Assembly (NCBI GenBank): GCA_965637545.1
Contig: OZ281496.1
Span: 7,688,001-7,752,000 of the forward strand
DNA length: 64,000 nt
Origin: Phallusia mammillata
Lineage: Eukaryota
Direction: 5' to 3'
The position numbers and the translations under genes were made by a program. Of the stretch, positions 14,341 to 61,143 are shown in pieces. The notes beneath the pieces are model-generated. The model was not told the DNA's origin, made no database searches, and was given only the letters and a program-made list of their open reading frames with translations. Each line of letters opens with the position of its first letter. The stretch's first letter is position 1.

Positions 14341-15655
14341 TTGTAATTTTATTATCGTTTTGGTTGCTTTAATTTCTGTTCCTAAGTTTGAAACAAAGGA
14401 ATATTATGTTTGAAATTGTTTGATACAAACTTACTGTATATACCTGCACATAAGTCGTACTGAAAATCCAGGGATTTAAAAGACCCTTTCCCTAGCTTTT
14501 TTGCATAAACAACTGGTGCAATTCGTTTTTTTTTTTAGCATTGAACTGCATTGCATTGAAACCGCAAAACTATGTTTTCTCAACAAAGCGGGAAAATCCA
14601 ACGCACGCTGAGCTGACGCATGTGCATGTGCGCTCATGAAACTGTCTCGGTATGTGTGTGCACGAGTGCATGTACCCGTATTCGACAGCACATTTCCACT
14701 ACAATTCTTGTCTATAACGCGCTCCCTTAATTTTTATTAAAAATTAGCATAAAATTTTGAGGGTTATACTCGAATAAATACGTTATATCCGCCCAATAAG
14801 CCGACCGGAACATACGGCACTTGCAATAGCCGAAAACTTTCAATTTTGTTCCGACTTGGTGGCGATTAGCACTTATGTCGAGCGTGTAGGTCGCACCTAT
14901 ATTTTTTTTAAATATAAGCAAAAAAGTTGCGACCTATCCGCGAGTATACACGGTAATTGAACAAACGTAGAAGCAAACCTATATTTACGTCATATTACAA
15001 ATTTCCAACAGCATGTGTGCAAGGTAAAATATACTGAAAAAATACTACCCTGGTGTTATGAAATTCAAATAAACAAAACAAATACTAATGCGATTAACTA
15101 CCTACAAAGCACAATTCCCAAGTGAATTTTAAACTAGCTAGTACCAACTTACTTAGCGATGTTGCAGTCTGCTGTGCAACAATTTCCTTTTCCAGCGTGT
15201 CCGATTACGCCTTACTTATATTGGTCCGAAACTGGGCCAAACCAACTGAGGTAAAATCAAAATGTTTTGACCAAAACTCAACAATATGTCTGACTCAACT
15301 AGTCACAAAATGAAGTAAGCAATTTCCAGTAAGATAAGACATAAGAAAGCTTGTAATGTTGTTGAGATGGTTGGTCACCAAGTTTCGCAAAACGTGATCT
15401 GGACAAATTAAATCACAGTCACATCCACGTTAAATGTAGTAAACGATCAGGCTGAAGTCGCACATTTGTTCGTTGCATTATTGCAAACTCTACGTAGATT
15501 CCAATGAGATTTAACGGTAGAATATCATAATTGTTGAATTCTAATCCCTCAAAGAATGAGCATAATCAACTGGAGTCGTTTCGTTCAACACGGTTTTTGG
15601 CAATCCGTTCCAATCTATTTTTAAGTTATAATTTTACACAGAGGAATGTTAAGGT

Positions 15656-15821
15656 TGTAATGTATTTACCCTCAAGTCATCAACGACACAACACGCACAC
15701 CTCGTGCAAAATACTTGTAATGACCTCAAGGGCAAAGCACGCGCTTATAAAGCGGTCGTTACGCTTAAGCGAACACACGTGGTGATACAAGACACGCATG
15801 AATAAACACAAATATATAACA
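15656..15821 (-). repeat. 3' LTR (166 bp)
   Basis: Direct repeat of 19694-19859; no mismatch seen by eye. Confidence 0.95.
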
Positions 15822-15830
15822 CTCCTCCCT
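15822..15830 (-). promoter_or_regulatory. Polypurine tract
   Basis: AGGGAGGAG immediately before the 3' LTR on the minus strand. Confidence 0.85.
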
Positions 15831-15841
15831 ACAAACAAATC

Positions 15842-18800
15842 CTAATTCTCAAAGCCATATCTGGTCGGCGGCTGTCGAGTTCTCGTGGGATAACGAGCAT
15901 AAGAATCGTTCGACATGCTGGAACGGCTATCAAAAGCATTAGAGTCGTTTGAAAGGTTGGGACGATTATCAAAAACAAAATCATCAAAACACGGCGAATT
16001 ACATTTCACATTGCAACGAACATTATTTTCCGACATGTCAATCAACTGATTAGTGTGACGCTTCCAAATAAATTTACAGTCTACACGTACGAGATAAGTC
16101 AGGGGCCCGAGAACTTTTTCTATAACGCCAATTGCCCAACGTTTACTGCGAGCACGATAATCCAAGGTTGCCACTTTTTGACCAACTTTAAATGTTCGTG
16201 GTGGCTGCCCGTGGTGCTTGTCTATTTGCTTTTCTATACACTTCTCAACCCTTTCTTCTCCCGCGGGTTGAACCAGATCTAGCCGTGTTCTCAAATTGCG
16301 CTTGAGGAACAGCTTGGCGGGGGACTCCCCTAACAATGCATGAGGAGCATTGCGATAGGACAACAAAAATCTTGAAAGTTTGCTTTTTAGGTTTCCAGGA
16401 TCGTTTGCCATAGATTGTAAACCTCTCTTGACAGTTTGTACAAATCTCTCCGCTTGGCCGTTGGTGGATGGAGAATAAGGAGCAGTCTTCGAATGACGAA
16501 TACCGTTCATCTTCATGAACGTCTCGAACTCCTGTGAAATAAATTGAGGACCGTTGTCTGAAACAATTTTTTCAGGAATACCGTTCCTTGAGAAAACGTT
16601 GCGAAGTTCGTCTATGGTTGCAGCCGCCGTGGTGGAACGCATCGGGATTACTTCTGGCCACTTGGAATAGGCATCCACGATCACCAAAAGCATGTGGTTT
16701 TCCACAGGACCTGCAAAATCTAAGTGAATGCGTTGCCAAGGTTTAACACAGGTTTGCCATGGGTGATATTTTACGATGGCTGGTGCGTTTCTGTTTTGTA
16801 AGCACCCCGAACAGTTTTTAGACAATTCCTCGATTTGTTTATCGAGGTTTGGCCACCAGACATAGTTTCGAGCGATTTGTTTCATCTTTACAACACCCAA
16901 GTGTCCGTTATGTAATTCCTGCAATATAGAAGACTTTAAACTTTCTGGAATAATCACCCTGGGTCCCCAAACCAAACATCCGTAATATGTAGATAACTCG
17001 TTTCTTCGATAATAATACGCCATGATGTCACTTTCCTGCACCCAATTGCCCGATGTCACACAAGCAAACACCCGTGACAAAATCTTGTCCGAGCGTGTGT
17101 GTTTAGCAATCTCATCAGCCGTTACAGGCAAAAAGTCAATCTGCTTGAAATAAAAACTGCTCGCAGCATCGCACGAAGTTTCAGTTGAGCCTTGCGGTAA
17201 TCTAGATAAACCATCAGCATTGCCATGTTGAGTTGTACTGCGGTATTCTATGGAATAATTATGAGCGGACAAAATTAAAGCATAACGTTGCAAACGCTGT
17301 GCCGACATTACAGGAATGCTTCTTTTTGGATGAAAGATAGAAGTAAGAGGCTCATGGTCTGTCACCAGCGTAAAATGTCGACCAAACAAGTAAATGTGAA
17401 ACTTTTGTACAGCCCACACAATAGCTAAAGCTTCTTTATCAATTTGCGAATAGTTTTTCTCGGACTTCGACAGAGATCTCGAAATGTATGCAATAGGTCG
17501 TTCACAGCCTTCTGGCATTACATGAGACATAACTGCTCCAATACCGTACGGTGATGCATCACATGCTAACCTAATTGGCAAATTTACATCATAATGTGTA
17601 AGAACCTTATCAGAAGCCATAAGTTTACGAGCTTTGTCAAATGACTGAGCGCATTCCAAGGACCAGTTCCATTTATGACCTTTCTCTAAAAGTTCACATA
17701 ACGGATGTAAAAGGGTTGACAGATTGGGCAAAAATCGATGATAATAATTAACTAAGCCAAGAAACGAACGTAGCTGGGACACGTTCTGTGGGATTGGACA
17801 ACTTGTCACTGCCCTAATTTTATCGTGCGATTTATGCAATCCCTCTTTATCTACCACATGACCACAAAATTCGATTCGATCCTTAAAAAACTCGCACTTG
17901 TTCGGATTGACTTTCAAGCCATACTCCGACAGTCGCTTGAGAACATTCCTAAGATTTTCTGTATGTTCTACATCGGTTGCTCCCGTGATTATCATATCGT
18001 CTAATAAACATTGTACCCCTTTCAAACCTTGCAGTACTTGATCCATAGCCTTTTGCCACAATGCTGGGGCTGAAGCTACCCCAAAAACTAGGCGGTTGTA
18101 ACGAAAAAGTCCTTTGTGGGTATTAATGGTAAGAAAATGTTTACAATCGTCTTCCATGGTCATTTGCAAATACGCATTTTTTAAATCCAGTTTTGTAAAA
18201 CGATTTCCTCCAGCCAACGTGGCAAATATATCAGTTACTTTAGGCAAGGGATATTGCTCTATGTTTAGGACTGGATTTAACGTTACTTTAAAATCTCCAC
18301 ACAATCTTACTGATCCATCCTTCTTCAACACTGGTACGATAGGGGTTGCCCACTCACTGTAAGGAACGGGTTCCAAAATGCCTTCAGATGTCAGCCTCTC
18401 TAATTCAGTTTCAACCTTTTGCTTTATGGCGTATGGAAGTGATCTTGCCTTGCAGAAAACAGGTTTTGAGTTAGATTTGAGATACAACTTTCCTTTGATT
18501 CCTTTTAACGTTCCTAATTTGTCATCAAATACCTCTAGAAACTCAACCAGCGGGCATTTAGTTACATCAAACTTCAAACAACTAAAACTTTCATGACTTC
18601 CAGATTTACAAAAAGCACGCAACCACTCACGACCAAACAACGTCGGACCATTTATTCCCACAACATAAAGTTTCAAGTGTAAACGAGTAGATCGGTATTC
18701 CACTGTAACTGGCAGAAACCCCAGTGGAATGATTCTCTCATTTGAATAAGTTTTCAAAACAATGCTTGTTGGTTCAAGTGTAGAGCCTTTAAACAAATTT

Positions 18801-19681
18801 TTGTAATCAGTCTCGGACATTATAGACAGTGCAGACCCAGTATCTAACTCCATTACGACGGGTTTACCATTAATTAATGGTCGAATCACTATATTGTCAT
18901 TTTCTGTTACACCAATGGAATTTAAACAACATTTTACAGGCACCTGTTGATCTTCGGAAGTAATGAAGTTAAAATTCTTCTTGCTTCGGTTTCTGCATGT
19001 TGATGCAATGTGACCTATTCTTCCACACTTGTAACACGTAGCACTTTTGAAAAAGCAGTTGAATTCTTCATGACCCAAGCGACCACATCGACCACACGCT
19101 CTTCGTCCTCTTGGATTCTCATTCCTACTAAACTTGTTAACGGCCATGTCATTATTTCTCATAATTTTTGTATCAGCATCGGCCTTTTCCAAAGTGTTAG
19201 CTATTACCACGGCTTGCGAAAAGTTCAAATTATTTTCGATTAATAATCGCCGTTGTATGGCCTCCGAGAGTATACCACAAACAAATCTCTGAGTTAATGC
19301 ATCATCCAAAAAATCACCATATTGACAATTTTCACTCAACTTTCTGATAACAGCCACATATTGATTGACTGATTCTCCAGGCATTTGATCCCGCTTTCCA
19401 AATTTAAAACGTTCAGAAATTTTTAAAGTGGTTGGGCAAAAATGTTCCGATAAAATTTTCACAATCTCCTTGTAAGTTTTTGAATAAGTTTTAGATGGTG
19501 CAACCAAATCTTTTAGAAGACTGTACGTCTTAGCCCCAACAAAATTCAAAAGTGCCGGTACCTGTTTGTCATTAGGAATGTCGTTAATTTTAAAGAACTG
19601 TTCAATCCTTTCCACGTACGTTGGCCATGTTTCCATTTCAGAATTGAACTCTCCAACACTTCCCAAGTAGGACGATCCCAT
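15842..19681 (-). CDS. Gag-Pol polyprotein (2x CCHC, protease, RT, RNase H, integrase), 1279 aa
   Basis: Motifs CGRCGRLGH..C and CYKCGRIGH..C; LDTGS; CLLDD; LACDAS; HHCC; HLDFAGP, DNGPQF and GQAERF. Confidence 0.97.
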   Translation of the reverse strand: MGSSYLGSVGEFNSEMETWPTYVERIEQFFKINDIPNDKQVPALLNFVGAKTYSLLKDLVAPSKTYSKTYKEIVKILSEHFCPTTLKISERFKFGKRDQMPGESVNQYVAVIRKLSENCQYGDFLDDALTQRFVCGILSEAIQRRLLIENNLNFSQAVVIANTLEKADADTKIMRNNDMAVNKFSRNENPRGRRACGRCGRLGHEEFNCFFKSATCYKCGRIGHIASTCRNRSKKNFNFITSEDQQVPVKCCLNSIGVTENDNIVIRPLINGKPVVMELDTGSALSIMSETDYKNLFKGSTLEPTSIVLKTYSNERIIPLGFLPVTVEYRSTRLHLKLYVVGINGPTLFGREWLRAFCKSGSHESFSCLKFDVTKCPLVEFLEVFDDKLGTLKGIKGKLYLKSNSKPVFCKARSLPYAIKQKVETELERLTSEGILEPVPYSEWATPIVPVLKKDGSVRLCGDFKVTLNPVLNIEQYPLPKVTDIFATLAGGNRFTKLDLKNAYLQMTMEDDCKHFLTINTHKGLFRYNRLVFGVASAPALWQKAMDQVLQGLKGVQCLLDDMIITGATDVEHTENLRNVLKRLSEYGLKVNPNKCEFFKDRIEFCGHVVDKEGLHKSHDKIRAVTSCPIPQNVSQLRSFLGLVNYYHRFLPNLSTLLHPLCELLEKGHKWNWSLECAQSFDKARKLMASDKVLTHYDVNLPIRLACDASPYGIGAVMSHVMPEGCERPIAYISRSLSKSEKNYSQIDKEALAIVWAVQKFHIYLFGRHFTLVTDHEPLTSIFHPKRSIPVMSAQRLQRYALILSAHNYSIEYRSTTQHGNADGLSRLPQGSTETSCDAASSFYFKQIDFLPVTADEIAKHTRSDKILSRVFACVTSGNWVQESDIMAYYYRRNELSTYYGCLVWGPRVIIPESLKSSILQELHNGHLGVVKMKQIARNYVWWPNLDKQIEELSKNCSGCLQNRNAPAIVKYHPWQTCVKPWQRIHLDFAGPVENHMLLVIVDAYSKWPEVIPMRSTTAAATIDELRNVFSRNGIPEKIVSDNGPQFISQEFETFMKMNGIRHSKTAPYSPSTNGQAERFVQTVKRGLQSMANDPGNLKSKLSRFLLSYRNAPHALLGESPAKLFLKRNLRTRLDLVQPAGEERVEKCIEKQIDKHHGQPPRTFKVGQKVATLDYRARSKRWAIGVIEKVLGPLTYLVRVDCKFIWKRHTNQLIDMSENNVRCNVKCNSPCFDDFVFDNRPNLSNDSNAFDSRSSMSNDSYARYPTRTRQPPTRYGFEN

Positions 19682-19692
19682 CCTCGTCGCCA
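19675..19692 (-). promoter_or_regulatory. Primer-binding site, tRNA-Ser(GCT) type
   Basis: TGGCGACGAGGATGGGAT, 18 nt complementary to the ...ATCCCATCCTCGTCGCCA tRNA-Ser 3' end; it contains the gag ATG. Confidence 0.85.
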
Positions 19693-19693
19693 G

Positions 19694-19859
19694 TGTAATG
19701 TATTTACCCTCAAGTCATCAACGACACAACACGCACACCTCGTGCAAAATACTTGTAATGACCTCAAGGGCAAAGCACGCGCTTATAAAGCGGTCGTTAC
19801 GCTTAAGCGAACACACGTGGTGATACAAGACACGCATGAATAAACACAAATATATAACA
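19694..19859 (-). repeat. 5' LTR (166 bp)
   Basis: Direct repeat of 15656-15821. Confidence 0.95.
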
Positions 19860-20990
19860 AAGGTAAATGATAACATTTACTTGTAAAGTCATTGCAGTCT
19901 TTACAGTGGAATAAATCTGGATTGTTCATTCCTTCAATGCACACAAATTCACTTCTCCAATCGTTTACTCTAAATAAGAAACAGCTTTTATACATAATAA
20001 CGTTGCGATTATTAGACGAAGTTACGGCACAAGATTAAGTATAAACTTCGGAAAAGTTGCGCTTCGATAGAAAGCAAAACAGTGTTAAAACATAGAGCAA
20101 TACAATATATTTAAAATTTAGGCTTGAATCTTACAGTTCGTTGCTTGGTGGAAGAATACTACGATGAACCTTATTCTTATTGATTCAAATTTATTAAAAT
20201 CCCTTCATTTAATTTTATGATTTTAAGATAAAACTCTTTCGCCTTTGTGGCATCTTCCGTATCAAAAGCCAACCACATAAGTATAAATTATTAAAGCATA
20301 CATAAAACAATAATAAAGACGCATGAAATTAATGTTAAAAATCGAACATTTATACTGCCGCCCCTGAATTCACACCAAGTAACTACATTGAGCAAAACAT
20401 GTGTAAACATGCAAACGAAAACGCCGTGTAAACCTGCAAACGTTCGGTTCGGTTTTTAACATTAATCGTGGCAGCTGCAAAACGTTTGTTTGAGCATGAA
20501 GTCAAATGGTTTATTTACAAATACAGCGGTTTTTCGACAAAGTTTAACTTTGTGGCTGTGCTTTGTGAGGCATTGTCAATTAAAGCGCAACTATGTGCCA
20601 GGTTGTACTGATTTAAACGAAAGTCTTTTTATCGGATGATTATAGGCTTGATTTACATTTTATATTCACAAAGAATTTGTTTGCTAAGTAGACTGTACTT
20701 ACTTTACAGCAGGACACATTGCGTAGACGCTCCCAGTTCTTCCATAAGCACGAAACTGAACAAAACCGGTCGGTAGAGGTTTTACACTTGGTGGCAGCAT
20801 CGAGTTAACTACTGAATCGTTTCCGATAGAAAATTGAACTGGCACTGAAAGTACGTCATCACCATAAAAGCAATTTGGACCTGAATCAACGGCGCAAAAT
20901 TTTGGAAATCATCAAGTTTATTGTGACGTATTGGTATTTGGGAACACTATACACGGACTTGAAAAGTAGTTTAAGTGGTGCAAAAACAGG

Positions 20991-21026
20991 CACTGATGAT
21001 GACAACAGAGATTGTCGAAAAGTCTG
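20991..21026 (+). ncRNA. Minimal hammerhead ribozyme motif, one core substitution
   Basis: CA-CUGAUGA-U-GACAA-cagaga-UUGUC-GAAA-A-GUC-UG; same stem II arms as 9939-9992. Confidence 0.5.
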
Positions 21027-27000: not shown

Positions 27001-27129
27001 AATATGCGAGAAGCAATACCATGATTACTAAAACACATTCTTTTACGCAAATACGGGTTATAATATTATAAATCAAATATTAGAACACAAGTAAGAAAGA
27101 ATTAAATCAGTTCCGCTTATATAAACAAT

Positions 27130-27220
27130 CCTAACCACAACCATAAAGCCATTAAAACTATTTACAGTTTTCAGTTTATCATATTTATCGATAAAATACC
27201 ATAATTGTTAAATCCAAATC
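27130..27220 (-). pseudogene. Intelectin-like gene 3' remnant (last ~11 codons DLDLTIMVFYR* plus 3' UTR)
   Basis: Closely matches 50935-51015 (agccattaaaactatttacagttttca...tttatcgataaaat). Confidence 0.7.
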
Positions 27221-27780
27221 TTTCCTAACCAACATACCTTTGACACATTTCTTACCAATATTAGCTCCGTTGTGAACGGCATCAAGTTCTGAAAACAGCA
27301 GGAACGGAATAACTCCATCTCGTTTTTAGACGTTTCCATAAGCAAAACAGTCAACAAAGTTTCAACATCCACTTATCGCAAACCAACAAACAGAGGACTT
27401 TGCAGCAAGTGGTTAAAGCTTTACACCGACGCATTTCAAATGTAACCTTGTGTTGGCCTTGATACAACGCTGCTACAAAATTGTCAGTTCTTACAGGATA
27501 ATTGAAATTGACAGTTCAAGAAAATCAAACAGGTCTTTCGGAACGGTTACCCGTCCCAGTTTATTGACAAGTGTGTGCAACGATTCCTCAGCAAGAAACA
27601 CTCTACTCGAACAAAAGCTCTAGCCGATTCAACCCAAGCTGTTGAATTGCATCTTCCCTTTTTAGGGACAGTTTTCCATAAGTCCGTTAGGAACTGGGCC
27701 GGTTTATCGACTGCTGTGGCGAAGGGAAAATCGATCGAAACCCAGGAGTTGGGCAACGCCGAATCAGGGGTTCGACGGAG
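27220..27780 (+). mobile_element. Penelope-like RT/thumb fragment
   Basis: The + strand translates FPNQHTFDTFLTNISSVVNGIKF..QERNNSISFLDV..TYRKPTNRGL..W and NGYPSQFIDKCVQRFL..LPFLG, collinear with ORF 10116-11096. Confidence 0.8.
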
Positions 27781-27879
27781 GTCTTTTTGAAGTACAATAC
27801 AAATACTCGTTTTTGTCAAACTTTAGGTCCTATAGTCGGTAAAAAGGGCAATGTGTGTTTGCCAAATATCGAAACACTG

Positions 27880-38199: not shown

Positions 38200-39030
38200 A
38201 TGTTAACATTACTTTTTTGGACAGTTTGATTCATATTCGTATGGATAACAATTTTGATTTGGGTTAAAGTAGATCTAAGTACATTACGCACTTTGTTAAT
38301 TGTTCAACAAAATCATCAGCGTTTAATAAACTTACTCCAATTCTGTAATCGTTTCTAAACAAATTACCATCCTGCAGCCTGGAAGGGTGGGTGCCATAGA
38401 CGTAAGGATAAAAATAAGTAAGTAAACTTATAATTTCTGTTGATTTTGCATTAAGTCGATCAAACGTCGAATTTACATCGGGATAAAACACTGAAAAAAT
38501 TTGGTTTAATGTCAATTAACTTTACATGGTACTGCATTAAAAGGTTTAAACGATCGCTGATAACAAACATTCCATTGGCGTTTGAATTTGTAATACTAGT
38601 AAATATTCAGTAATTGATTGGCTTAAATTATTTGCAAAAACAACATGTGAAGTGTTTGTCTTACCACTTTTTGGTTTTAGTTGATATCGAGAGTAAAACA
38701 TTTTGTGCATGTATTCTCTAAAAATTTGCATAAATCCGTTTTCTATTTAATATTGCAAGCAACTCTGCTCTCTGCAGGCCTCCAGTGGTGTTTGATTAGG
38801 AGCATGACGTAACATCATGTATTTTCCCTAAAAACTAGCAGGTGCTGAAAAAAATTGCATTATGCAACAAAATATTTGCCTGATATTCATAACAAGCTTG
38901 ACTTTTAAAATCTGATCTTGTGCAAGTAGCAAATGTCTCTAATGTATTTTTGCTCATCCAGTTTCGGTAATCTGGAATTGAAAAACCACGAACAATTTGC
39001 GAGTGGAGAAAATAATCTTTTTCACCTATA
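38200..39030 (-). pseudogene. Intelectin-like gene internal fragment (copy B, decayed)
   Basis: PDYRNWMSKNTLETFATCTRSDFKSQACYEYQ and FYPDVNSTFDRLNAKSTEI are homologous to the exons at 53360-52700; stops and frameshifts are present. Confidence 0.8.
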
Positions 39031-50900: not shown

Positions 50901-50979
50901 TTTTTAAATGAGTTAATTTGAAATGTACAATGATAACCACCAGCCATTAAAACTATTTACAGTTTTCAATTTATCGTAT

Positions 50980-53900
50980 TTATCGATAAAATATCATAAT
51001 TGTTGAATCCAAATCTCTCTGAGAATGAGCATAATCAACTTTTTGGACCGCGGTATTCGGCAATCCGTTCCAATCTGGGTTGAATCAAAATGTTACGTTC
51101 AAGGATAAAATGTTCAAGAGAACGAAAGGTAATTTACTTGTAAAATCATTGCAGTCATCCAAGTAGGGAGAATCTGGATTCTTCATTCCTCCAATACACA
51201 CAAATTCGCCTCGCCAATCATCCACTCTAAAAAAATCAGATTTTGTATCATTTAGGCACCAATGTGAGCCCCGTTACTTTTAACCGTTTACTACAGTTAA
51301 ATTGTATCTGTATTTTTGTACAGTTTGTTGTACCTGAACTGCGACTTACTTAACAGCAGGACACATGGCATAAACACTCCCAGTTCTTCCATAAGCGCGA
51401 AACTGAACAAAACCGGTCGGTAGAGGTTTTACACTTGGTGGCAGCTTCGAGTTAACCACTGAACCGTTTCCGATGGAAAATTGAACTGGTACTGAAAGTA
51501 CGTCATCATCATAAGTGCAGTCCGGACCTGCAACACCAAGGTTACTTAAACAAGAACGCAAGAATGTGAATGTGGTAAAGGTAATTGTAACATTTTTGTC
51601 GACTAAACAAATTAACTTGTCATTGATTGTTGCTAAAAATGTTTTACTTACAGAAGTTGTCAGATTCTGAAACAGTTTCCAATATTTTGTAGCTAACAGC
51701 GTTGATCACTGTTTTAGTGATCAAAGTAGCATTTTTTCTGTGGAGGAGAGTCAAAAGAACAAAAATATGACGATGTCTGTATTAGTAATATCACTTCACA
51801 TCCATCAGTGATCAACCGTATACCTTGAAACCATTGTGTAACCAAAAAGTGTGTTGGATACAGCTTCACGAATTCTCCATCCAAAACGATACGATCTTGA
51901 GGATATATAGTTGTATGGTTCTGTTAAAGGCGTTCCAAATGAGTTCCAATTCTGCTTGACAAACAACAAGCTAGTTGCGTTATTATGAATGTCGGTTGTC
52001 ATTACAGTGCCTAATTGATTAACATCATATTAATTAAACACATCACAAATGGTAAAATATTTCATGTAATGTTGTACGTCAACATCATTAGTCTATGTTT
52101 TGCCTAATTATATTAGTGAAAAAGCATAAAACAGTGTAACATGGCGAATCCAACGTACCTCAGTATTACTGACGTAAAACCAGACATCACACAAGCTGGC
52201 ATACAAACTTCCATTTCTACATTGTGCTTCATAATGCAAAAAGAAATTGTTGAGAGTGTGATTTCCCTTGTACAAAACTATTGAATCCGTACCTGGTCGA
52301 TCAGAGTATACCTGAACAGATCAAGCATAAAAAACTATTTGTCACAAATTATCTATACAACATCCCCTACCCAAAGTAACATGTTGTAAAAACAGCGATC
52401 AAAGTTTCCCACAGACAACAAGGCAAAGAAGGGATGCGTTTTTAGGCTCGATCTTTTCGTATTGCCGAGATCACATCTGTATTGTTTGGCAAAGAGTTAA
52501 ACTTGGCATGAAACCAGTTAAACTTGAAACCAAAACAATATTTGACTTACTTATAATCCAACTCATATTGTAAATAGCCGTTTTGACAGTTTGCTTGGTA
52601 TGATCTTGGATAGCAAGATTGGGTTGTGGAAAAGTAAATCTGTGTCAATTTTTTTATTTGTAAGTCCACAATAATACGGTCATGCAGATAACTTACCTGC
52701 ATTCCATAATAACTATACAAATTGCTATCACGCAAGTTGTCCGAATCAGTGCCATAGTCGTAAAAATAGAAGTCCGAAATTAGACTTGTGATTTCTGTGG
52801 ATTTTGCAGCAAGGCGACCCAACATTGAATTCACATCGGGGAAAAAAGCTAAAATAAGGAATGTCATTAGTAAATTAAACTAATCAGAACTGTAATCAAA
52901 CAAATCATCCATGCAAAGATCACTTTTAACCCTGTCCCGCCAACAATCTCATTCGCCGCCTATATTACCATTTTACTTACTCACATGTTTAATGTGCAGG
53001 CAAAAAATGAGAACTAAGAAGAAACTATCGCAAAAGTTAGGTATATTACCACTTCTTGGATTCAACGGATAATGATAATTGTAAATTGTATGCAAATTTC
53101 CTCCGTAATTTTTCATAAAACCGTTTTTCGTTTGATATTGCAGAAAACCCTTTTCCCTGCTGGCCTGCAGTGGTGTTTGGTTTGGAACATGACGTACCAT
53201 AATGTCTTCTCCCTAAAAGATTTTCTCCGTTTTACAAAAAAGTACGAATTTCACACCACATTAAATTTGCCTGATATTCATAATAAGCTTGGCTTTTAAA
53301 ATCTGATCTTGTGCATGTAGCGAATGTTCCAAAATAATTTCTGTTCATCCAATTTTGGTAATCTGGAATTAAAAAGCTTATAATAAGCTTTTGCCATTGA
53401 TGTAACGTTGTCAAACTAACTCATGTAATTCTGGTAATTGTTTGACATGGCAACAAACCACGATCCACCATAAGCTTCAGTCATATTGAAATTCCTGTCG
53501 TTAATTGTGGCCGCGAGAATCCATCCACCACCGGCAGCTTTCATGTCACAGTAAACCTGAAGTTAAAACCAACTGTGACCAACTTTTTCTATAGCTTTTA
53601 ACTGATTGAATTTTTATTAGTCTTGAAAGCTTAATTTAAAGTTATGGCGACCACTTTTGCATGTTTACATTCGTGTTTATCGAAACGTGCGTTATGCCGT
53701 TTTCTCGCTCTGACGTTGTTGCCTTACAAGCGCGTTTTTATTGTTAGGTGGTCTTATTGTACTGCTGTTGAATAAAGCATCCGCTTAAAGTAATGGATAA
53801 TTTTGTTTCAGCAAATGACTTTTGAAACGCAAACAAAACTTACACAAACGAAATATTATTTACCTCAAATGCCGTATGTGACGGTTGTATGACGTAGATT

Positions 53901-56900
53901 CCATCTTTAAATCCAGCGTCTCTCAGTTCAATACATGAACCGGCAGGATTGGGGAAAGTACCAAATGGTGGTTTTGTTGTCACTGATTCAGTTGTGTTAG
54001 TTGTTTGTTCAGTTGTGTGTGGTGCTAAAACTTTTCATGGATAATTTGTTTTCATTTTGCTTTATAAAAGGGCGATAATCCTAAAGACCAAGTTTATTCT
54101 TGCCATTTCTCTGGTTTAGTGTTTATTTATTAAGCATTTACCAGAAGTACATTAAGTACTTTTTTTCACGCTACCAACTATAAAATTTTCACAGATGAAA
54201 AAACAATTTGAAACTCTTACTTTCAGATGTTGCTTTTTCTCCGTTCTGAAACAAGACAAACAGAAACAACTTTAATAACCATAGTTACGAAGGCAGTTGT
54301 TTTTTTTCCTTCTGCTGAGTCACCTGACTTTTTGTGAAATTGATTATGCCGAAAATGAGTCCCAAAGCAGCCAGAATCACAACCACCAACACCAAGATTG
54401 TATTCAGATGGCACATCTCTCGCATATTCCAACATTTTTTAGGTGTTTCGTGACGTGATTGAGCACTTTTATTGTCTAAAAATATTGAACATATTGTAAA
54501 TGTGCAATTGCTACAGCTCTTCGGTTTCATATTGAGTTTTAAATTTATCTTAACTAATGGCAATTAACGTCGATCCACTCTTTCTCCGAACTTAGGTTAC
54601 AGAGCTTGAGACTTACTTCACAAGACTTATCTTTAAAAATCTTACTGTATGGTTGACTTTAACTCAAAATTAAAAAGCAACTAAAAATACTGGCGCCAGC
54701 TTGTTAAAAGGAATTTATTGAGAACTTACTAAAATTGTGAATAGTTTTATCTCTTGTTGTAGTTTCATTTTGCCGCAATCCTGTTACATTACGAGCATTT
54801 GATGATGATTCCTCGTATATGTTTGAGAATCCTTGTCGACTTTCTGTCGTAACAAAATTTGCTTTATTCCTAAATTAAACCATACCATATTAAATCATAC
54901 ATTAAAAGAGCGCTAAAGTTTGAAATACCTGGTTCTCTTTTGAGAGTTTGTTTCATCGCTTGTCCTTCTTTAATTCCGACCGTTTCGTATGTGTCTATGG
55001 GGCGCCGTTTGTAAAAATATCAATGACATTTCTAAAAAGCCTTTTTTGCCCAAATAATGAAGCCCTTTGTAAAAATATGCATGTGTAAAGAACCACGTCA
55101 TTTTGATTTAGCTATATCAGAATGGGAATGCCATTCCGATTTAGCTATATCAGAACGGGAATAACAGTTCCATTCCGATTTAGCTATATCAGAACGGGAA
55201 TGTCATTTTCATTTCGATTTAGTTAAATCAGAACGGGAATAACATTTCCGTTCCGTTTTAGCTATTTCAGAACGGGAATGCCATTCCGATTTAGCTAAAT
55301 CAGAAGAGGAATAAAATTTCCGTTCCGATTTAGCTAAATCAGAACGGGAATGCCATTCCGATTTAGCTAAATCAGAACGGGAATGCCATTCCGATTTAGC
55401 ACTGAACCATGACGAACTGAGTGATGGACCGGACCATAATAACCAACGGGGTGTAAGGACTTAAATTACATGCAACGTTTCGGGGTTTGTCTAATTCGCA
55501 ACCGGTCAGAAATCTGCTGTTAGTTGACAACTGTAACATATTATTTAATTGCAATCAATTAGGTTAGGAGAGGTAAATACAGTTAAACATTAGCAATGCA
55601 ATGAACGAACGGTGTGGATAATCTCGGTTCCAAAACCAGAAATATGGAACGTGGACGTCGTAGAGGCGGACCTGCATGTGTTTTATTATGGTTAGTTTGG
55701 TAACATCCATGCAAGAGCATTTTTTTATTTTCTTTATTCTACTTCAAGGGAAGGCCAAAAAAGCAAGTTCCGATGGACAGGTTGTTGGAACTTTTGCAAC
55801 TTAAAGTCTCAATTACAAAAATTGCAAAAATCTTGGAAATTTCCCGACCAACCCTAAAAAGGGTTATGAGAGAAAACGATGTGGATATTAATCAGTACAG
55901 GTATATCATGAACTTTGTTTTGGTTCTAAATGAGTATACTGTATCTGATCAATGTGTATACACAGGTTCAAAAAGTACATTTTCTCAAGGTCGGGTATTT
56001 ATTTTGCAGTTCGTTGACCAATAATGAGTTGGATGATGTAGTCCGCAACATAAAACAAAACCACCCAGCAGCTGGAGAGGCAATGATGAAGGGTCATCTT
56101 CAATCACAGGGTATACGTATCCAAAGAAAAAGATTGCGTCAGAGTCTTCACCGAGTTGATGGCGAGGGGATCCATGCAAGACAGCTGACTACAATAAGCA
56201 GAAGGACCTACACTGTTCCGTGTCCTAATTATATTTGGCACATAGATGGAACACATAAGCTCATAAGATGGAAATTTGTCATACATGCAGCTATGGATGG
56301 CTTTAGTCGTCTCATTACATTCTGCCACTGTTCAACCAATAACAGATCATCTGTAGTGTTAAAATTGTTTAAGGAAGCTGAAGCAAAATATGGTTTACCA
56401 TTACATGTTCGATCCGACTATGGAGGAGAAAATGTGCAAGTGTGGAATTACATGCTAGAAAAGCATCAGAACTATCATGCAGTTATTACTGGAAGCTCTG
56501 TCCATAACCAGCGCATTGAAAGGTTCAACCGTGATATAAACACACAAGTTGTAAATAAATTTTACAATGACTTTTTCTTTCTTGAAGAAAGTAATTTGCT
56601 TGACCCAACAAATGATACAGATTTGTTTTGTTTACATTTTGTGTTTTGCCACATCATTAATAAGCGAATCCAGGAGTTTGTTAATGCTTGGAACAAGCAC
56701 AGTCTTTCCACTGAAAAAAATTGCACTCCTGAACAGTTGTTTCATCTTAACTTACATTTACTTCAACTGCAAACTTTAAACGATACTGGTAAAATAGATA
56801 GTGAGGATATTGTATGCCCAGGTACAAGTTCTGTTGAAGTAGACGCTATTCCCCATTTACCACATGAATGTGTGAGTGAGCTACAGGACCTATTGCAGCA

Positions 56901-59900
56901 AAACTCTAATCTAGATGGAATTATTTTGTATAAAAATGCAGTCAACAAAAAGTTGGAATATTTAATCCGGACACAACACAATGCTTTGGTAGTGTAAATT
57001 TGATGCATGAACTAATGTAACAGTTTTTTGATTTGCATGTTTTGAAAACAATACAAAAATGTGCCAGCAAGATGTCATTTATTTCGGGTTTAAATCCAGG
57101 TAGTGACCAGAAAAGCACTGGCTAAAAAAGATCAAAAACAAAAGAACACCCAACTAGCCATTTCAAAGGATCCAAAATATCAGGGTAGATTTGTGTTATA
57201 TTTCAGTTAAGCAACACCAAATCCGGGGGAATTCAGGATTGCAAAATCCATTGCTTCTTTGAAGTTTTCATACTTGCTGTATCTTGTGGGTACAGTCAAT
57301 ATGTTCGCACAAGTGTTTGCCAAAGGGTACATAGACTCGTTCGAGAACTCAATGGATGGAGTTGGAGAAAAACCAAGAGGAGGCACTTGATCTGCCCCAG
57401 TTGCAAATATTAAAATTTCTTTTATTGAACATAAGGATTCCCCATCTGAAATGAAAGTCAAAACACAAGTCATGTGTTGTATGCTAATGTGCTGAATGTG
57501 AATACCTTCAACATCCAGTACGTAATCCCTCCAGAAGGAAACCGCCCGATTTTCCTGGCATCTTTCGTTGCTTCCAGGTTCTGATAGATTTAAATTGATG
57601 AAAATTGAGTCAACAATTTCTATGCCACTCAATGGTTTATTGTTTTGCCACAGAAAAATATCCTCAAATCCATTTGGTGCCAATTTTGCCTTATGTAGCA
57701 AATTATGTGTCATTAGACCAAGTCTAAACCTTGAAATAAACAAAAACCTCTTACTGTCTCAGTAATATAAATCATTGCTTTTAAGCCATACCTGGCCAAT
57801 AACTCGGTAAGGCGATCCTCTGTATAAAATTTAATTGCTTTTTCAACAATGTCATTTTTGCATGACAGGTCCTTCACAAATGTAATGGAACCACAAATAG
57901 ACAAGAAATCATCCATATCTGACAATGCCACATTTAATTCCTCTACTGTATCAGTATTTTTGATCTGTTGACAAGTTGAATTTATCTTACAAAGTTGACA
58001 GTTTAACATACAAATACTATACAATTGAATTAGCGCTTACTTTTGTTAACTTGGAAAACAAGACAGGGTCATTTATAGTTGCAAGAGCGTCCAAAAAATT
58101 TCTTGATCTATCAAGAACTTGATCATACAATAACTGGGAAAAAAAGCGTGGAGCAGGCCCACCATGAATGATTGAAAGGGAGATAATACACCCATACACA
58201 TAATACAGGTCCTTGGCAATTGCTATAAAATAAACACAACTATTAATTTGGTAGTATTTTTCATTCTTAATTTGCTTCAATATACCGTAACAAAAGTACA
58301 CATTTTACAAAGTTGTTTGCTAATCAACAAACTGTAGAACTAAGGTATATCTAATGTACTATTATGTACCTGTTTCATTTCTTGTGAGAATTTTTGCTGT
58401 TTCATTTCCTTCAAATATTATGCTGTTTGCCACAGCTTGCATTACTAATCTTAAAAATTCTCTGGTAGGTCCACCTGCATCTACAGCACCCTCAGACTGG
58501 CCAATATCATCACTAAATTTCACACTCATTCTTGCATTAGCACAAAAACTTTTTCGCTTTATGGCACGGACAGCACAGTCCAGAACATTTTGGCGATTGA
58601 CATTAAAGAAGTTTACTTGACTTTCATCGATGCTGTCTCTAATACACCTTATAGACTCATGAGCAGATAATTCCTCAACTTGGCACCTTCAGAAACACAG
58701 TTAATTAACCTTCTTTGTACCAAATATTGCTACCATGTGTCAAATTCCAAACTCATCGAAAAAACTAACACTGAAACATGTACCTATCTTTGTTTGGGGT
58801 TTCTAGCAATGAAGCCTCAATTGCCTCTTGAATCAGAGTGTCCTCATCAATTTCCTCAGATATCAAGTTTACATAATCCCTAACAACATAAGTGCAATTT
58901 GGTAACCAATACACAAACATACCTGAAGTTATTTTGTTGTGTGCAAGTCAATTTTAGTAATTACAAATAACCACAAAAAATTAAGAGATAAATTTAAGTG
59001 TCCACTTACATGTACAAAGAAGGTGTCTGACATGTGCCAGGTTTGGTATTTGAGCACTCCTGTAAACACAAAATATTTTTGCAATAAAAAATAATTTGAA
59101 ATGTTAGAAAATCTAACTAGAAAGTTTTGCTCACCCCACACTTGAAATCTTCATCTAAAACTGAATTATATTTATGCAAAGAAATGTTTGAACATGTTTT
59201 GTCACCTTTCTGCAATAAATTTATAAAATTGTCATTCCCTATTGTTTTATGATTGTTAATTTGACATTTACATACTCATATTACCTCAACAGTTTTTTCT
59301 GTCAAAAGATTCATGGAGGATTTCAAAAGTTGGTGTTCTTTTTGTACAGTGACGTAAATAATGCTTTTACCGAGTGAAAGCACTGCAGCAGCATCCCATC
59401 TAAATGATTCACTTACTTTTGGCTTAACAAGTACTTTCAAACCAGGCAAATTGCTGAGATAATCAAACTGTAGTAAATCTTTTGATAATAATGGTGTTTG
59501 AAATGGAGTAAATTGACTTTTGAAAACATCTGAAATCTCTCTTCTTACTTCCTGTTCAGACCAGCTGTTACTTATTGAAATCTTTGCAACTAACCCAATA
59601 GCAGCAAGTTCACTTCTGTTTTTTCCTCTTGGTATTTTAAACGCAATGTTGTGCGAGTTGTTTTGTACTTGCTCCATTATATTTGCAGGTATGCAAATTA
59701 TAGTTCGGGTGTAATACATTGTTTTTGGTTTTGTTCGTCTTCTACCTCCTTTTACTGCGGTTGGCACATACCTAGATCCTCTTTGTTTTGTGCACGAGGG
59801 TAGTGAATGTTTGTAATCCTGCCAAACATTTTTATTTTTTTCAACAATACCAACCCAAATAGCCGAATTAACCGAATGAAAAACACTAACTGTCATATAC

Positions 59901-61143
59901 AAAACTACCTTTCTAAAATCGTCATCATCACTGTCAGATTCTATAAACAACAGCTTTGTTGCTTCATTTCCACCAGGCCTTGTCACCTAATTTAAAGTAC
60001 AACATGTTTAAATGATAATGCTAGTGATTATATACATTTAAATGCAAAAAATACCTACAGGGCACAAAGTTTTTATTTGTTTTAATTTTTAAGGTGTCAA
60101 ATACTGAATGATATTAATCCAACAAGAACCATTTGGGAGTGTAAAAATGTTTGGCCTAAAGATAACTTATTTTTGTATGGGTGTTACCTAATGTAAATCA
60201 AATGGCAGAATTGAAATTTAGTTTACTTTTGATGGTTGTTCATGGTTGGGTGTCACTGGTCCAATTTTATCAGTTGTGGAAGAGCATGTTGGAGAATCCG
60301 AATTGTTGGTTACAGTACCAATAATTGCTGCAGCAAAGTCACCTACAGCTTTTTTTATGTGCTCTTGCAGGTTTGCATCCATATTATCGTTTCGCCCAAA
60401 AAAACGAACTGAAACAAATCCTACGTGATAACGAGTACCTTCTATGTTACACCCACCGGGAGTTCACATAAAAATATTTTTTTTCTGGTTTTGGAACCGA
60501 GATTTTTCACGCCGTTCGTTCGCTGCATTGCTGATGTTTAACCGTATTTGTCACTATCAGTCCTAACCTGTTTGGTTATATTTTTTATAAAATGGTACAG
60601 TTGTCAATGAACAGCTGATTTCTGAACGAAATCAGAAACGTAGCATGTAATTTAAGCCCCAACACCCTGTTGATTATAATGGTTCGGTCCATCACTTAGT
60701 TCGTCATGGTTCAGTGCTAAATCGGAATGGCATTCCCGTTCTGATTTAGCTAAATCGTAATGATTTAGTTAAATCGGAATGGAAATGTTATTTCTGTTCT
60801 GATTTAGCTAAATTGGAATGGCATTCCCTTTCTGATATAGCTAAATCGGAATGAAAATGTGACTCTCGTTCTGATTTAGCTAAATCGGAATGGCATTCCC
60901 GTTCTGATTTAGCTAAATCGGAATGAAAATGTTATTCCCGTTCTGATTTAGCTAAATCGGAATGACATTCCCTTTCTGATTTAGCTAAATCGGAATGAAA
61001 ATGTTATTCCCGTTCTGATTTAACTAAAGCGGAATGGCATTTCCGTTTTGATTTAGGTAAATCTGAATGGAAATGACAACAAATATTTTTACAAACGGCG
61101 CCCCATATGTGTCATCACCATGATTTATGTAAATATGCGCCAT
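50980..61143 (-). CDS. Type II membrane intelectin-like protein, copy C (~15 exons, roughly 700 aa), exon 1 interrupted by IS3EU
   Basis: ATG at 61143: MAHIYINHGDDT|YETV. Exons include 54324-54475 (TM TILVLVVVILAALGLIFGII), 54221-54245 and 53864-54024 (SCIELRDAG), then YCDMKAAGGGWILAATIN, FKSQAYYEYQ-GEDIMVRHVPN, YGGNL, TGFVQFRAYG, EFVCIGG, DCNDF, WNG and STIMIFYR* (stop 50980-50982), collinear with vertebrate intelectin. No stop was seen in the exons I translated. Confidence 0.8.
55100..55480 (+). repeat. Left subterminal array (~8 units of 33-40 bp) plus inner inverted repeat
   Basis: Unit ccGATTTAGCTAAATCagaacgggaatgccatt. Confidence 0.9.
55749..56997 (+). CDS. IS3-like DDE transposase/integrase with N-terminal HTH; intron 55901-56009; possible upstream exon from ATG 55644
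   Basis: GRPKK..HTH; in-frame GT-AG splice (NQY/S/SLTN); WHIDG, RSDYGGEN and SVHNQRIERF give the D-D-E triad. Confidence 0.88.
57207..60382 (-). CDS. Multi-exon G2E3-like HECT-domain E3 ubiquitin ligase carried by the transposon
   Basis: Exon 1 is 60227-60382 (MDANLQEHIK). Later exons encode VNRQNVLDCA..VKFSDDIGQSEGAVDAGGPTREF, SIIHGGPAPRFFS and ILIFATGADQVPPLGFSPTPSIEF..PLANTCANILTVP..AILNSPGFG with the catalytic Cys retained. Confidence 0.8.
60635..61075 (-). repeat. Right subterminal array (~10 units) plus inner inverted repeat
   Basis: Reverse complement of the left array; gcatgtaatttaag...ttcgtcatggttcagtgctaaatcgg mirrors 55390-55475. Confidence 0.9.

What the first reader, a model, noticed from the sequence alone, without database searches (positions are those of the whole stretch)
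15511..61143. Intelectin fold rebuilt as a type II membrane receptor with conserved cytoplasmic tyrosine motifs
Seen: two paralogues (A 25452->15511, C 61143->50980) encode, in order, an N-tail with YETM/YETV at the same position (residue 13) and N(V/I)YEES, then a ~20-aa hydrophobic helix about 100 aa in, a Thr-rich stalk (TPHTTEQTTNTTESVTT), and the fibrinogen-like plus intelectin-specific domain ending FYR*. The two Tyr motifs are conserved while the tail around them has diverged. Established: canonical intelectins are secreted lectins with a signal peptide that bind microbial glycans; YxxM/YxxV motifs recruit SH2 proteins or AP2. Inference: an expanded family of signalling or endocytic glycan receptors, architecturally like type II C-type-lectin receptors but built on an intelectin domain; a candidate innate-immune or recognition system that I do not know to be described.
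Basis: partly seen in the sequence, partly recalled or inferred. Interest (0 to 1): 0.82.

Follow-up and report, generated by a model that had tools for sequence, protein, structure and literature searches.

The report
Decayed membrane-anchored intelectin gene cluster
This sea-squirt (Phallusia mammillata) window holds three copies of an unstudied kind of intelectin that is anchored in the cell membrane instead of being secreted, but every copy here is broken, interrupted or a fragment.

Summary
The sequence features are real. Both copies encode a Met-started tail with YETM/YETV at residue 13 and N(V/I)YEES, a 20-23 residue hydrophobic helix, a Thr-rich stalk and an intelectin domain split by a ~240-aa insert.

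The type II architecture holds at family level. Ciona intestinalis RefSeq models LOC108950076 and LOC100179075, both "uncharacterized", have the same layout and form a 100/99 clade with copy C. A fold model of the Ciona protein best matches XEEL and human intelectin-1.

No intact gene is shown in this window:
- Copy A is a pseudogene: lost acceptor, three frameshifting deletions, an in-frame TAG and a gypsy element in its last intron.
- Copy B is a relic.
- Copy C has a 6.1-kb DNA transposon inside coding exon 1 in this assembly and needs a weak donor to keep the helix in frame.
- RNA-derived contigs from three studies carry an extra A in C's exon 3, which puts the helix out of frame.
- C's main mRNA is a spliced-leader trans-spliced 211-aa 3' form without helix (UniProt A0A6F9DJY8).

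Signalling or endocytosis is untested. Only a [V/I]-Y-E-[E/Q]-[S/D]-like tyrosine recurs in Ciona. This scan has already reported the same family from other windows of this genome, some with intact copies.

The parts
61114..61143 (-). Copy C, exon 1, first 30 nt (ATG at 61143, codons 1-10)
   Evidence: The contig of run X5 continues from 54995 directly into this sequence.
54996..61107 (-). DNA transposon inserted inside coding exon 1 of copy C, between codons 12 and 13. It has a 6-bp target duplication GACACA, 15-bp terminal inverted repeats, long subterminal repeat arrays, and carries HECT-domain ORFs.
   Evidence: ends and duplication; inverted arrays; HECT, E 4e-12; empty-site allele in run X5.
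54929..54995 (-). Copy C, exon 1, remainder. It encodes the rest of the first tail segment, including Y13-E-T-V. Donor CCAG|GTATTT.
   Evidence: The 85-nt intron 54928-54844 is seen as a spliced joint in run X1.
54730..54843 (-). Copy C, exon 2 (tail, NIYEES)
   Evidence: Spliced joints 54843|54929 and 54475|54730 in RNA contigs. Frame.
54324..54475 (-). Copy C, exon 3: membrane-proximal basic residues and the hydrophobic helix. An A-run at 54435-54440 is A6 here and A7 in RNA contigs. There are two candidate donors, with exon ends at 54329 (weak) and 54324 (strong).
   Evidence: (insertion behind 54434 in X1, X2, X5; the X1 contig ends at 54324).
53050..54024 (-). Copy C, exons 4-7: Thr-rich stalk and the N-terminal half of the intelectin domain (CDM..GGGW motif). 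The exon 6-7 intron is GC-AG.
   Evidence: Fibrinogen_C; XEEL/ITLN1, E 1e-7 and 1e-3; GC-AG joint 53211|53270; GC donor conserved in A, B and C.
51652..52848 (-). Copy C, six exons encoding the ~240-aa module inserted in the intelectin fold
   Evidence: canonical intelectins align only to residues ~149-299 and 562-661. Joints 52308|52368, 51951|52159 and 51737|51824. Beta-rich module in the Ciona model.
50980..51527 (-). Copy C, last three exons: the C-terminal intelectin region ending IMIFYR and the stop codon
   Evidence: joints; XEEL 7e-11 / 9e-7; ITLN1. A 9-nt in-frame indel lies behind 51036.
51824..52012 (-). Internal spliced-leader acceptor (AG at 52012-52011), then the first exon of the short mRNA (ATG at 52003)
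   Evidence: In one search the X9 contig ends at 52016 with the loose letters GTACGGG+ATTCTATTTG.. P0002 (CAB3263286.1, 211 aa) matches this ORF. The SL sequence is confirmed in PMC1488885.
15511..25452 (-). Copy A, a pseudogene. The tail, helix and stalk exons are open. Its lesions are a lost acceptor (23299-23298), deletions near 22935, 22899 and 22410, a TAA at 22407-22405 and a TAG at 15543-15541.
15656..19859 (-). Gypsy-type LTR retrotransposon in the last intron of copy A. Its two 166-nt LTRs are 100% identical and its gag-pol ORF of 1279 aa is open.
   Evidence: (RT, RNase H, integrase, zinc knuckle).
38221..38999 (-). Copy B: relic holding only the equivalents of exons 6, 7, 8a and 8b
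27147..27226 (-). Remnant of a last exon plus 3' flank, 94% identical to copy C 51019-50942

Best explanation
The window holds a decaying tandem cluster of a phlebobranch-ascidian gene family. Its ancestral product is a type II (N-terminus inside) membrane-anchored intelectin. That product has a 55-95 residue acidic, tyrosine-bearing cytoplasmic tail, one signal-anchor helix, a Thr-rich (probably O-glycosylated) stalk, and an intelectin ectodomain interrupted by a ~240-residue beta-rich module.

Shown:
- The architecture exists in two Phallusia copies and in Ciona gene models.
- The ectodomain is an intelectin fold.
- Copy A is a pseudogene and copy B a fragment.
- Copy C is interrupted by a transposon in exon 1 in this haplotype.
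- In C, exons 1-2-3 and most 3' exons are spliced as modelled.
- RNA-sampled alleles of C carry a +1 frameshift that removes the helix from the reading frame.
- The abundant C transcript is a spliced-leader trans-spliced 3' form encoding 211 aa without tail, helix or N-terminal lectin half.

Inferred:
- Intact family members sit at the cell surface, bind an extracellular ligand and are internalised through YxxPhi-type tail signals, much as FIBCD1 works. Tyrosine phosphorylation is a possible second output.
- The copies in this window probably contribute little or no membrane receptor.
For: - Exon chain of C. It gives a 661-aa ORF with GT-AG sites and one GC-AG. It is colinear with Ciona XP_026693525.1 over residues 133-661, 39% identity, E 2e-108.
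- RNA joints for introns 1, 2, 6, 10, 11, 12, 13, 14 and 15 of the 16-exon model, plus the empty transposon site.
- Helix and orientation. Kyte-Doolittle 3.36 in C and 2.7-3.0 in Ciona. There are 3-4 Lys/Arg in the 15 residues before the helix in C and both Ciona proteins (one in pseudogene A).
- Coding conservation between A and C fits the helix frame: 5 synonymous-only codon changes against 3 in the other frame (alignment, my count).
- Intelectin identity. Hits to XEEL, ITLN1 and lamprey lectin on both halves. The fold model of the Ciona protein has TM-score 0.76-0.78 by target, E 1e-17 to 5e-18.
- The membrane-anchored group is its own clade at 100/99 support.
- Lesions of A.
- A7 allele in three studies, and the four allele/donor combinations.
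- Exonic differences between reference and RNA allele in the 5' half: 17 non-synonymous, 3 synonymous.
- Short form. SL loose end, acceptor and ORF match the deposited cDNA-derived protein.
Against: - No spliced contig was shown for five junctions of C: helix exon to stalk exon, exons 4-5, 5-6, 7-8a and 8a-8b-9. There the contigs are colinear with the genome, so a full-length mRNA is not demonstrated.
- The RNA contigs of the 5' half differ from the reference by ~2.5% and could come from a near-identical paralogue rather than an allele.
- The A6/A7 difference sits in a homopolymer and could be an assembly error.
- Ten of eleven small indels fall in introns, which hints at some remaining constraint on C's exons.
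- Contigs drop rare variants, so absence of a spliced form is weak evidence.
- Function (surface location, ligand, endocytosis, phosphorylation) is untested.
- Ciona LOC108950076 has no YxxPhi motif in its tail.
Confidence: 0.7

Rival explanations
1. Copy C is a working membrane receptor gene in the population. The transposon insertion and the A7 frameshift would then be haplotype-specific null alleles of the kind common in fast-evolving immune receptor clusters, and an intact haplotype (empty site, A6, donor at 54329) makes the 661-aa protein.
For: - The reference exons give an uninterrupted 661-aa ORF once the transposon is removed.
- Exons 1-2-3 are spliced in RNA.
- Small indels between haplotypes are nearly all intronic.
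- The excess of non-synonymous differences could reflect diversifying selection.
Against: - No observed haplotype combines the empty site with A6.
- The contig carrying the empty site also carries A7.
- The X1 exon-3 contig stops exactly at the strong donor (54324), which gives a truncated product with A6.
- The 5' half has low depth and mostly unspliced contigs.
Confidence: 0.2
2. In copy C the 5' and 3' parts now act as separate units. The 5' part would be a short tail-plus-helix membrane protein (135 aa with A6 and the strong donor). The 3' part would be an independent SL-trans-spliced mRNA for the C-terminal lectin fragment.
For: - Internal SL acceptor at 52012-52011 with a 5'-complete contig.
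- Depth of the 3' exons is 4-20 times that of the upstream exons, and there is no upstream coverage in run X9.
- The public cDNA-derived protein is the short form only.
Against: - A cis-spliced joint 52159|51951 links upstream exons to the 3' exons in run X2 at depth 44.
- The short product starts inside the inserted module and lacks a signal sequence and half of the intelectin fold, so it is unlikely to fold or be exported.
Confidence: 0.1
3. The hydrophobic segment is an ordinary signal sequence. Translation would start at a Met just before it (MREMCHLNT... in C), the upstream exons would be 5' UTR, and the protein would be a secreted intelectin.
For: C has two Met codons 5-9 residues before the helix, and canonical intelectins are secreted.
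Against: - The ~95-codon frame from the first ATG to the helix is open in both A and C across RNA-verified junctions.
- A has no Met in the helix exon before the helix.
- Ciona models have 55-60 residue tails in frame.
- The hydrophobic core is 20-23 residues, long for a cleaved signal peptide.
Confidence: 0.05

Closest known systems
Secreted intelectins / X-type lectins (human ITLN1, Xenopus XEEL, lamprey serum lectin)
   Same: - Same fold and sequence family. The CDM..GGGW fibrinogen-like start, the HVPN..GGNL middle and the GF(V/I)QFR...C(I/V)GG...FYR end all match.
- The structural match of the Ciona relative has TM-score 0.76-0.78.
   Different: - No cleavable signal peptide; instead a cytoplasmic tail and an internal helix.
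- The domain is split by a ~240-aa module.
- Of the ligand-site residues of ITLN1 (N260, E262, H263, E274, W288, Y297; numbering from my memory of Wesener 2015, consistent with the aligned sequence), only E262, W288 and Y297 are kept in copy C, and only W288 and Y297 in Ciona.
FIBCD1
   Same: Type II transmembrane protein with a C-terminal fibrinogen-related recognition domain. It is described as a tetrameric endocytic receptor for chitin (abstract of PMC9994688). This is the nearest known architecture.
   Different: - FIBCD1 carries a classical FReD, not the intelectin variant. In one search the exon with GGGW scores E 0.13 to FIBCD1 against 0.001 to intelectins.
- FIBCD1 has a coiled coil rather than a Thr-rich stalk, and no inserted module.
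- There is no evidence here of oligomerisation or endocytosis.
Collagen-stalked split intelectins of other ascidians (Clavelina LOC143452591, Styela LOC120332903 and metagenomic/transcript relatives)
   Same: They share the split intelectin ectodomain with the inserted module, at 31-32% identity to copy C over ~530 residues.
   Different: - They have a signal peptide, a Cys-rich segment and collagen-like Gly-X-Y repeats (a ficolin-like secreted design), and they end in FTR.
- They form a separate clade with 97/97 support.
Type II C-type lectin receptors with tyrosine-based tails (Dectin-1/CLEC-2 hemITAM, ASGPR YxxPhi); from general knowledge
   Same: Same topology and logic: an N-terminal tail with tyrosine motifs, a stalk and a C-terminal lectin domain. 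In copy C the first tyrosine follows acidic residues (DDTYETV), loosely like a hemITAM.
   Different: - Unrelated lectin fold.
- The +3 position is V/M, not L/I, and ITAM and ITIM consensus are not met.
- No functional data.

Membership tests
Intelectin (X-type lectin) family | Fibrinogen-like N-terminal subdomain with the CDM-x3-GGGW-(T/I)-L motif | tested here: met
   The exon at 53556-53421 hits Pfam Fibrinogen_C at E 4.7e-4, just under its cut-off. Its best PDB hits are lamprey lectin and XEEL at E 1e-3.
Intelectin (X-type lectin) family | Intelectin-specific region, including the C-terminal GF(V/I)QFR...CIGG...FYR stretch | tested here: met
   - Exon 7 against XEEL 123-167, E 1e-7.
- The C-terminal 112-116 residues against XEEL and ITLN1, E 9e-7 to 4e-6 for the copy C product and 7e-11 for paralogue P0004.
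Intelectin (X-type lectin) family | Overall intelectin fold | tested here: met
   Tested on the Ciona relative P0020, not on copy C itself. The AlphaFold model has mean pLDDT 76. Top Foldseek hits are 4WMO, 6USC, 4WMQ and 7E1E, with TM by target 0.76-0.78.
Intelectin (X-type lectin) family | Calcium/exocyclic-diol binding residues of ITLN1 | tested here: not met
   By alignment, N260 becomes R, H263 becomes F and E274 becomes S in copy C, while E262, W288 and Y297 are kept. Residue roles are recalled from Wesener et al. 2015, which I did not read here.
Intelectin (X-type lectin) family | N-terminal signal peptide, secreted protein | tested here: not met
   The only strongly hydrophobic segment lies at residues 97-115 of 661, after a 95-residue tail. 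The Ciona relatives are the same.
Type II membrane lectin receptors (architecture class, e.g. FIBCD1) | Single internal signal-anchor helix with basic residues on the N-terminal side and the recognition domain at the C-terminus | tested here: met
   The Ciona model has a helix at 50-82, flanked by a low-confidence tail and stalk.
Type II membrane lectin receptors (architecture class, e.g. FIBCD1) | An intact gene and a transcript joining tail, helix and lectin exons in this window | tested here: inconclusive
   - A is a pseudogene.
- For C, exons 1-3 and the 3' exons are spliced in RNA, but five junctions were not seen as spliced.
- The haplotypes seen are either transposon-interrupted or frameshifted.
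Type II membrane lectin receptors (architecture class, e.g. FIBCD1) | Surface expression, ligand binding, endocytosis | not testable with these tools
   Needs expression and cell assays.
Tyrosine-based tail signals | YxxPhi (AP-2 type) motif | tested here: met
   By sequence only: YETV in C; YETM and a second YETV in A; YNSI in Ciona LOC100179075. Ciona LOC108950076 has none.
Tyrosine-based tail signals | ITAM (two YxxL/I 6-12 residues apart), ITIM ((S/I/V/L)xYxx(I/V/L)) or hemITAM (DEDGYxxL) | tested here: not met
   The tyrosine contexts are DDTYETV, SNIYEES, TGAYETM and RNVYEES. Position -2 is D, N, G or N, and +3 is V, S, M or S. Only Ciona AIAYNSI fits ITIM, and that Y is F in XP_002126755.1.

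The most novel reading that the evidence does not exclude
Phlebobranch ascidians may carry a lineage-specific, rapidly diversifying family of membrane-anchored split intelectins. Their phosphotyrosine or endocytic tails would make them germline-encoded recognition receptors for immunity or self/non-self. The mix seen here (transposon insertion, frameshift allele, pseudogene, relic, excess of amino-acid-changing differences) would then be the birth-and-death and null-allele polymorphism typical of such receptor clusters.
Probability: 0.15. Interest if true: 0.75.

Novelty: new variant of a known kind. Interest (0 to 1): 0.45.

Why it matters
Intelectins are treated as secreted lectins. A clade that is membrane-anchored by an N-terminal signal-anchor and carries tyrosines in its tail would show that the X-type lectin fold was also recruited as a cell-surface receptor in the sister group of vertebrates. 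That would parallel FIBCD1 and the type II C-type lectin receptors.

The Ciona members are already public gene models, which makes the idea directly testable in a transgenic model animal.

For this particular window the value is mainly cautionary and descriptive. The copies here are damaged, and the main transcript is a truncated trans-spliced form. A transposon insertion and a frameshift differ between the assembly and RNA-derived contigs. Intact members elsewhere in the genome are the ones to study.

Tried and rejected
- **Single-exon searches.** The exon-12 search of solved structures was too weak to use (E 0.17). Whole cDNA-derived proteins gave clear hits instead.
- **Spurious hits.** The 58-aa exon search of the representative library returned four true relatives plus repeat proteins (P0001, P0005, P0007-P0009; tandem-repeat or RCC1-like). 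I rejected these as spurious.
- **Homologue search with P0004 alone.** It found only itself.
- **Alignment A2.** An alignment that mixed proteins with single exons was misaligned and I dropped it.
- **Exon 1 of C.** I first read it as ending at a donor before Tyr13, which would have put YETV in an intron. The spliced joint 54843|54929 and the empty-site contig disproved that.
- **Transposon target duplication.** I considered an 8-bp duplication. It leaves two bases unexplained, whereas 6 bp (GACACA) with 15-bp inverted ends fits.
- **Literature.** Hayashibe et al. 2017 on Ciona intelectins is not held. Searches for the Ciona LOC identifiers found nothing.
- **Copy C model.** The spliced 661-aa model has no reference form, so I did not submit it to the search or fold tools. 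I used Ciona P0020 as a proxy for the fold.
Full report
**Organism and setting.** The window is from the ascidian Phallusia mammillata. A 58-aa exon of copy C is 100% identical to CAB3263286.1 / A0A6F9DJY8 of that species. RNA contigs carry the ascidian spliced leader ATTCTATTTGAATAAG (identified in PMC1488885). All intelectin-like exons lie on the minus strand. tblastn and blastn with copy C's exons find three copies:
- copy C (61143-50980);
- copy A (25452-15511);
- relic B, which holds four exons at 38999-38221 and a last-exon remnant at 27226-27147.

**Observation: what is confirmed.**
- In A, the ATG at 25452 gives Tyr13 in YETM. NVYEES, a hydrophobic exon and a Thr/Ser-rich stalk follow.
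- In C as assembled, the ATG at 61143 is followed by Y-G-A-P-F. This is because a 6.1-kb DNA transposon (54996-61107; 6-bp duplication GACACA, 15-bp inverted ends, long inverted subterminal arrays, HECT ORFs) sits between codons 12 and 13.
- A contig of run X5 runs from 54995 straight into the first 30 nt of exon 1, so an empty-site allele exists. On that allele residue 13 reads YETV.

**Gene model of C.**
- Spliced RNA contigs give these introns: 54928-54844, 54729-54476, 53270-53213 (GC-AG, with the GC donor conserved in A, B and C), 52370-52312, 52158-51952, 51823-51738, 51651-51528, 51349-51227 and 51137-51075.
- The remaining junctions were set from conserved acceptors and donors and from matching phases.
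- The result is 16 exons and a 661-aa ORF. It has one strongly hydrophobic stretch (residues 97-115, Kyte-Doolittle 3.36), 16 Cys, all but two of them after the helix, and the stalk TPHTTEQTTNTTESVTT.
- Residues 133-661 align end to end with Ciona XP_026693525.1 (39% identity, E 2e-108). This validates the ectodomain chain independently of splice-site choices.
- Canonical intelectins align only to ~149-299 and 562-661, so about 240-260 residues (six exons) are an insertion.

**What is wrong with the copies here.**

*Copy A* is a pseudogene:
- the acceptor of the GGGW exon is TG, not AG (23299-23298);
- exon 7 has 5-nt and 2-nt deletions relative to both B and C;
- exon 8b has a 1-nt deletion followed by TAA (22407-22405);
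- the last exon has TAG in place of a Leu codon, nine codons before the stop (15543-15541);
- the best exon-1 donor is out of phase;
- a gypsy-type LTR retrotransposon with identical 166-nt LTRs and an open 1279-aa gag-pol ORF lies in the last intron (15656-19859).

*Copy B* is a fragment.

*Copy C* is interrupted in exon 1 in this haplotype. Its helix frame also reaches the stalk exon only through the weak donor AAAA|GTCAGG (exon end 54329). With the strong CAG|GTGACT donor (54324) the frame breaks after 135 residues.

**RNA evidence on C.**
- The runs are RNA-derived. They contain GT-AG joints and a template-switch adaptor fused to the spliced leader.
- Exons 1-2-3 are joined as modelled, at low depth.
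- In all three studies that cover exon 3 (runs X1, X2, X5), the A-run at 54435-54440 has seven A, not six. Read from exon 2, the helix is then out of frame. With the strong donor the ORF stays open for 663 codons but contains no hydrophobic segment.
- The X1 exon-3 contig ends exactly at 54324, and its intron 3 has no coverage. This fits use of the strong donor.
- Between exon 3 and exon 6, and across the exon 7-8a intron, the contigs shown are colinear with the genome. Splicing of those junctions, including helix exon to stalk exon, is therefore not demonstrated. Contigs can lose minor paths, so this is not proof of absence.
- The RNA allele differs from the reference at 20 listed exonic sites in the 5' half. 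Seventeen of these change the amino acid. The 3' half is identical apart from a 9-nt in-frame indel. This fits relaxed constraint or diversifying selection on the 5' half, or a close paralogue as the source.

**The main transcript of C.**
- In run X9 a contig starts with adaptor plus ATTCTATTTG and joins the genome at the acceptor AG 52012-52011. An ATG follows at 52003.
- Spliced through the verified 3' introns, this gives the 211-aa protein deposited as A0A6F9DJY8.
- Depth of these exons is 4-20 times that of the upstream exons, and X9 has almost no upstream coverage.
- A cis-spliced joint 52159|51951 also exists in run X2, so both forms occur.
- Mapped on the model of the Ciona relative, the short product begins within the last strands of the inserted module. 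It lacks the signal-anchor and the N-terminal half of the lectin fold. I infer that it is unlikely to be a functional secreted or membrane lectin.

**Is the architecture real?** Yes, at family level.
- A profile search found ascidian split intelectins of two designs.
- *Design (i):* signal peptide, Cys-rich segment, collagen repeats and a split intelectin ending in FTR (Clavelina, Styela, several transcript contigs). Locus L001 shows the collagen repeats in frame upstream of P0011.
- *Design (ii):* proteins with a 55-60 residue tail, an internal helix, a Ser/Thr-rich stalk and a split intelectin ending MIF(Y/Q)R. These are Ciona intestinalis LOC108950076 (605 aa) and LOC100179075 (633-637 aa), plus a 288-aa paralogue model.
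- Copy C and Phallusia P0004 group with the Ciona membrane forms at 100/99 support. They are apart from the collagen clade (97/97) and from canonical intelectins (100/98).
- The helix frame is also the conserved one between A and C: 5 synonymous-only codon changes against 3 in the alternative frame (my count).
- Lys/Arg cluster on the N-terminal side of the helix.
- The AlphaFold model of LOC108950076 has a low-confidence tail, a helix at 50-82, a low-confidence stalk and a confident ectodomain. Its best structural matches are XEEL, human intelectin-1 and the lamprey lectin (TM by target 0.76-0.78, E about 1e-17).

**Tail motifs.**
- Phallusia C has DDTYETV and SNIYEES.
- Phallusia A has TGAYETM, RNVYEES and a further MHNYETV.
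- Ciona has EAVYEQD and DIGYNVE (LOC108950076), and AIAYNSI and EEIYFNE (LOC100179075).
- What recurs across genera is an acidic tail with a [V/I]-Y-E-[E/Q]-[S/D]-like tyrosine, not YETV/YETM itself.
- One Ciona tyrosine is Phe in an older RefSeq protein.
- YxxPhi is met by sequence in three of the four tails. ITAM, ITIM and hemITAM consensus are not met in Phallusia.
- With two Phallusia sequences, one of them a pseudogene, 'conserved while the rest diverged' is suggestive only.

**Ligand site.** By alignment to ITLN1, copy C keeps E262, W288 and Y297 but has R, F and S at N260, H263 and E274. Ciona keeps only the two aromatic residues. The residue roles are from my memory of Wesener et al. 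2015; PMC8185196 confirms only that a calcium ion binds the exocyclic diol. Binding of microbial glycans in the ITLN1 manner should not be assumed.

**Comparison and novelty.**
- The nearest sequence family is the intelectins.
- I found no paper on membrane-anchored intelectins or on the Ciona loci. The only Ciona intelectin study cited in the held literature (Hayashibe et al. 2017) could not be read.
- The Ciona proteins are public but named 'uncharacterized'.
- I rate this a new variant of a known kind.
- Earlier notes of this scan report the same family, including intact and expressed copies, in other windows of this genome. I used them as leads. I tested one of their claims myself, that such genes sit unnamed in other ascidian annotations, and it holds.

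**Verdict.** The design is real and apparently undescribed. In this window, however, it is represented by one pseudogene, one relic and one polymorphically disrupted gene whose principal mRNA is a truncated trans-spliced form.

Noticed in passing
window 51824-52016 (-): Spliced-leader trans-splicing onto an internal acceptor (AG at 52012-52011) in the middle of copy C. The X9 contig carries a template-switch adaptor plus the start of the SL, so this is a true mRNA 5' end. The resulting 211-aa ORF equals UniProt A0A6F9DJY8.
   Followed up: yes
window 54996-61107: Presence/absence polymorphism of a 6.1-kb DNA transposon with HECT-domain ORFs. It has a 6-bp duplication GACACA and 15-bp inverted ends beginning TATGGGGCGCC. 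The empty site was seen in a contig of run X5. It sits inside a coding exon.
   Followed up: partly
window 15656-19859 (-): Gypsy-type LTR retrotransposon with two 100% identical 166-nt LTRs and an uninterrupted 1279-aa gag-pol ORF (RT, RNase H, integrase, zinc knuckle). It looks like a very recent insertion. Described only.
   Followed up: partly
window 53213-53270 (-), and the homologous sites near 22995 and 38870: A 58-nt GC-AG intron (CAG|GCAAAT) is conserved in all three copies and is verified as spliced in runs X1 and X2.
   Followed up: yes
window 51036: All four runs carry a 9-nt in-frame insertion (adding Thr-Pro-Val) relative to the assembly. Copy A and paralogue P0003 also have TPV, so the reference allele of C has a 3-codon deletion. 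Run X1 holds both alleles.
   Followed up: partly
window 52775-54995 versus 50950-52775: The RNA contigs differ from the assembly by about 2.5% in the 5' half of copy C (17 of the 20 listed exonic differences change the amino acid). They are identical in the 3' half. This could be a recombinant haplotype, a near-identical paralogue, or very different constraint on the two halves.
   Followed up: partly
window 2476-2491 (+) and 5617-5632 (-): An exact copy and a one-mismatch copy of the 16-nt ascidian spliced leader sequence lie in the window, far from the intelectin genes.
   Followed up: no
L001:3-134 (Logan contig ERR1739839_217713): The frame upstream of the called start of P0011 is open and encodes collagen-like Gly-X-Y repeats. 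This split intelectin therefore belongs to the secreted collagen-stalked design and is truncated at its 5' end.
   Followed up: yes
protein P0003 (CAB3257380.1, Phallusia 'intelectin-like protein', 190 aa): Its first ~65 residues match the out-of-frame translations of the exon-10 and exon-11 equivalents. It lacks the 86-nt exon. It looks like the longest ORF of an aberrantly spliced or pseudogene transcript of another paralogue.
   Followed up: no
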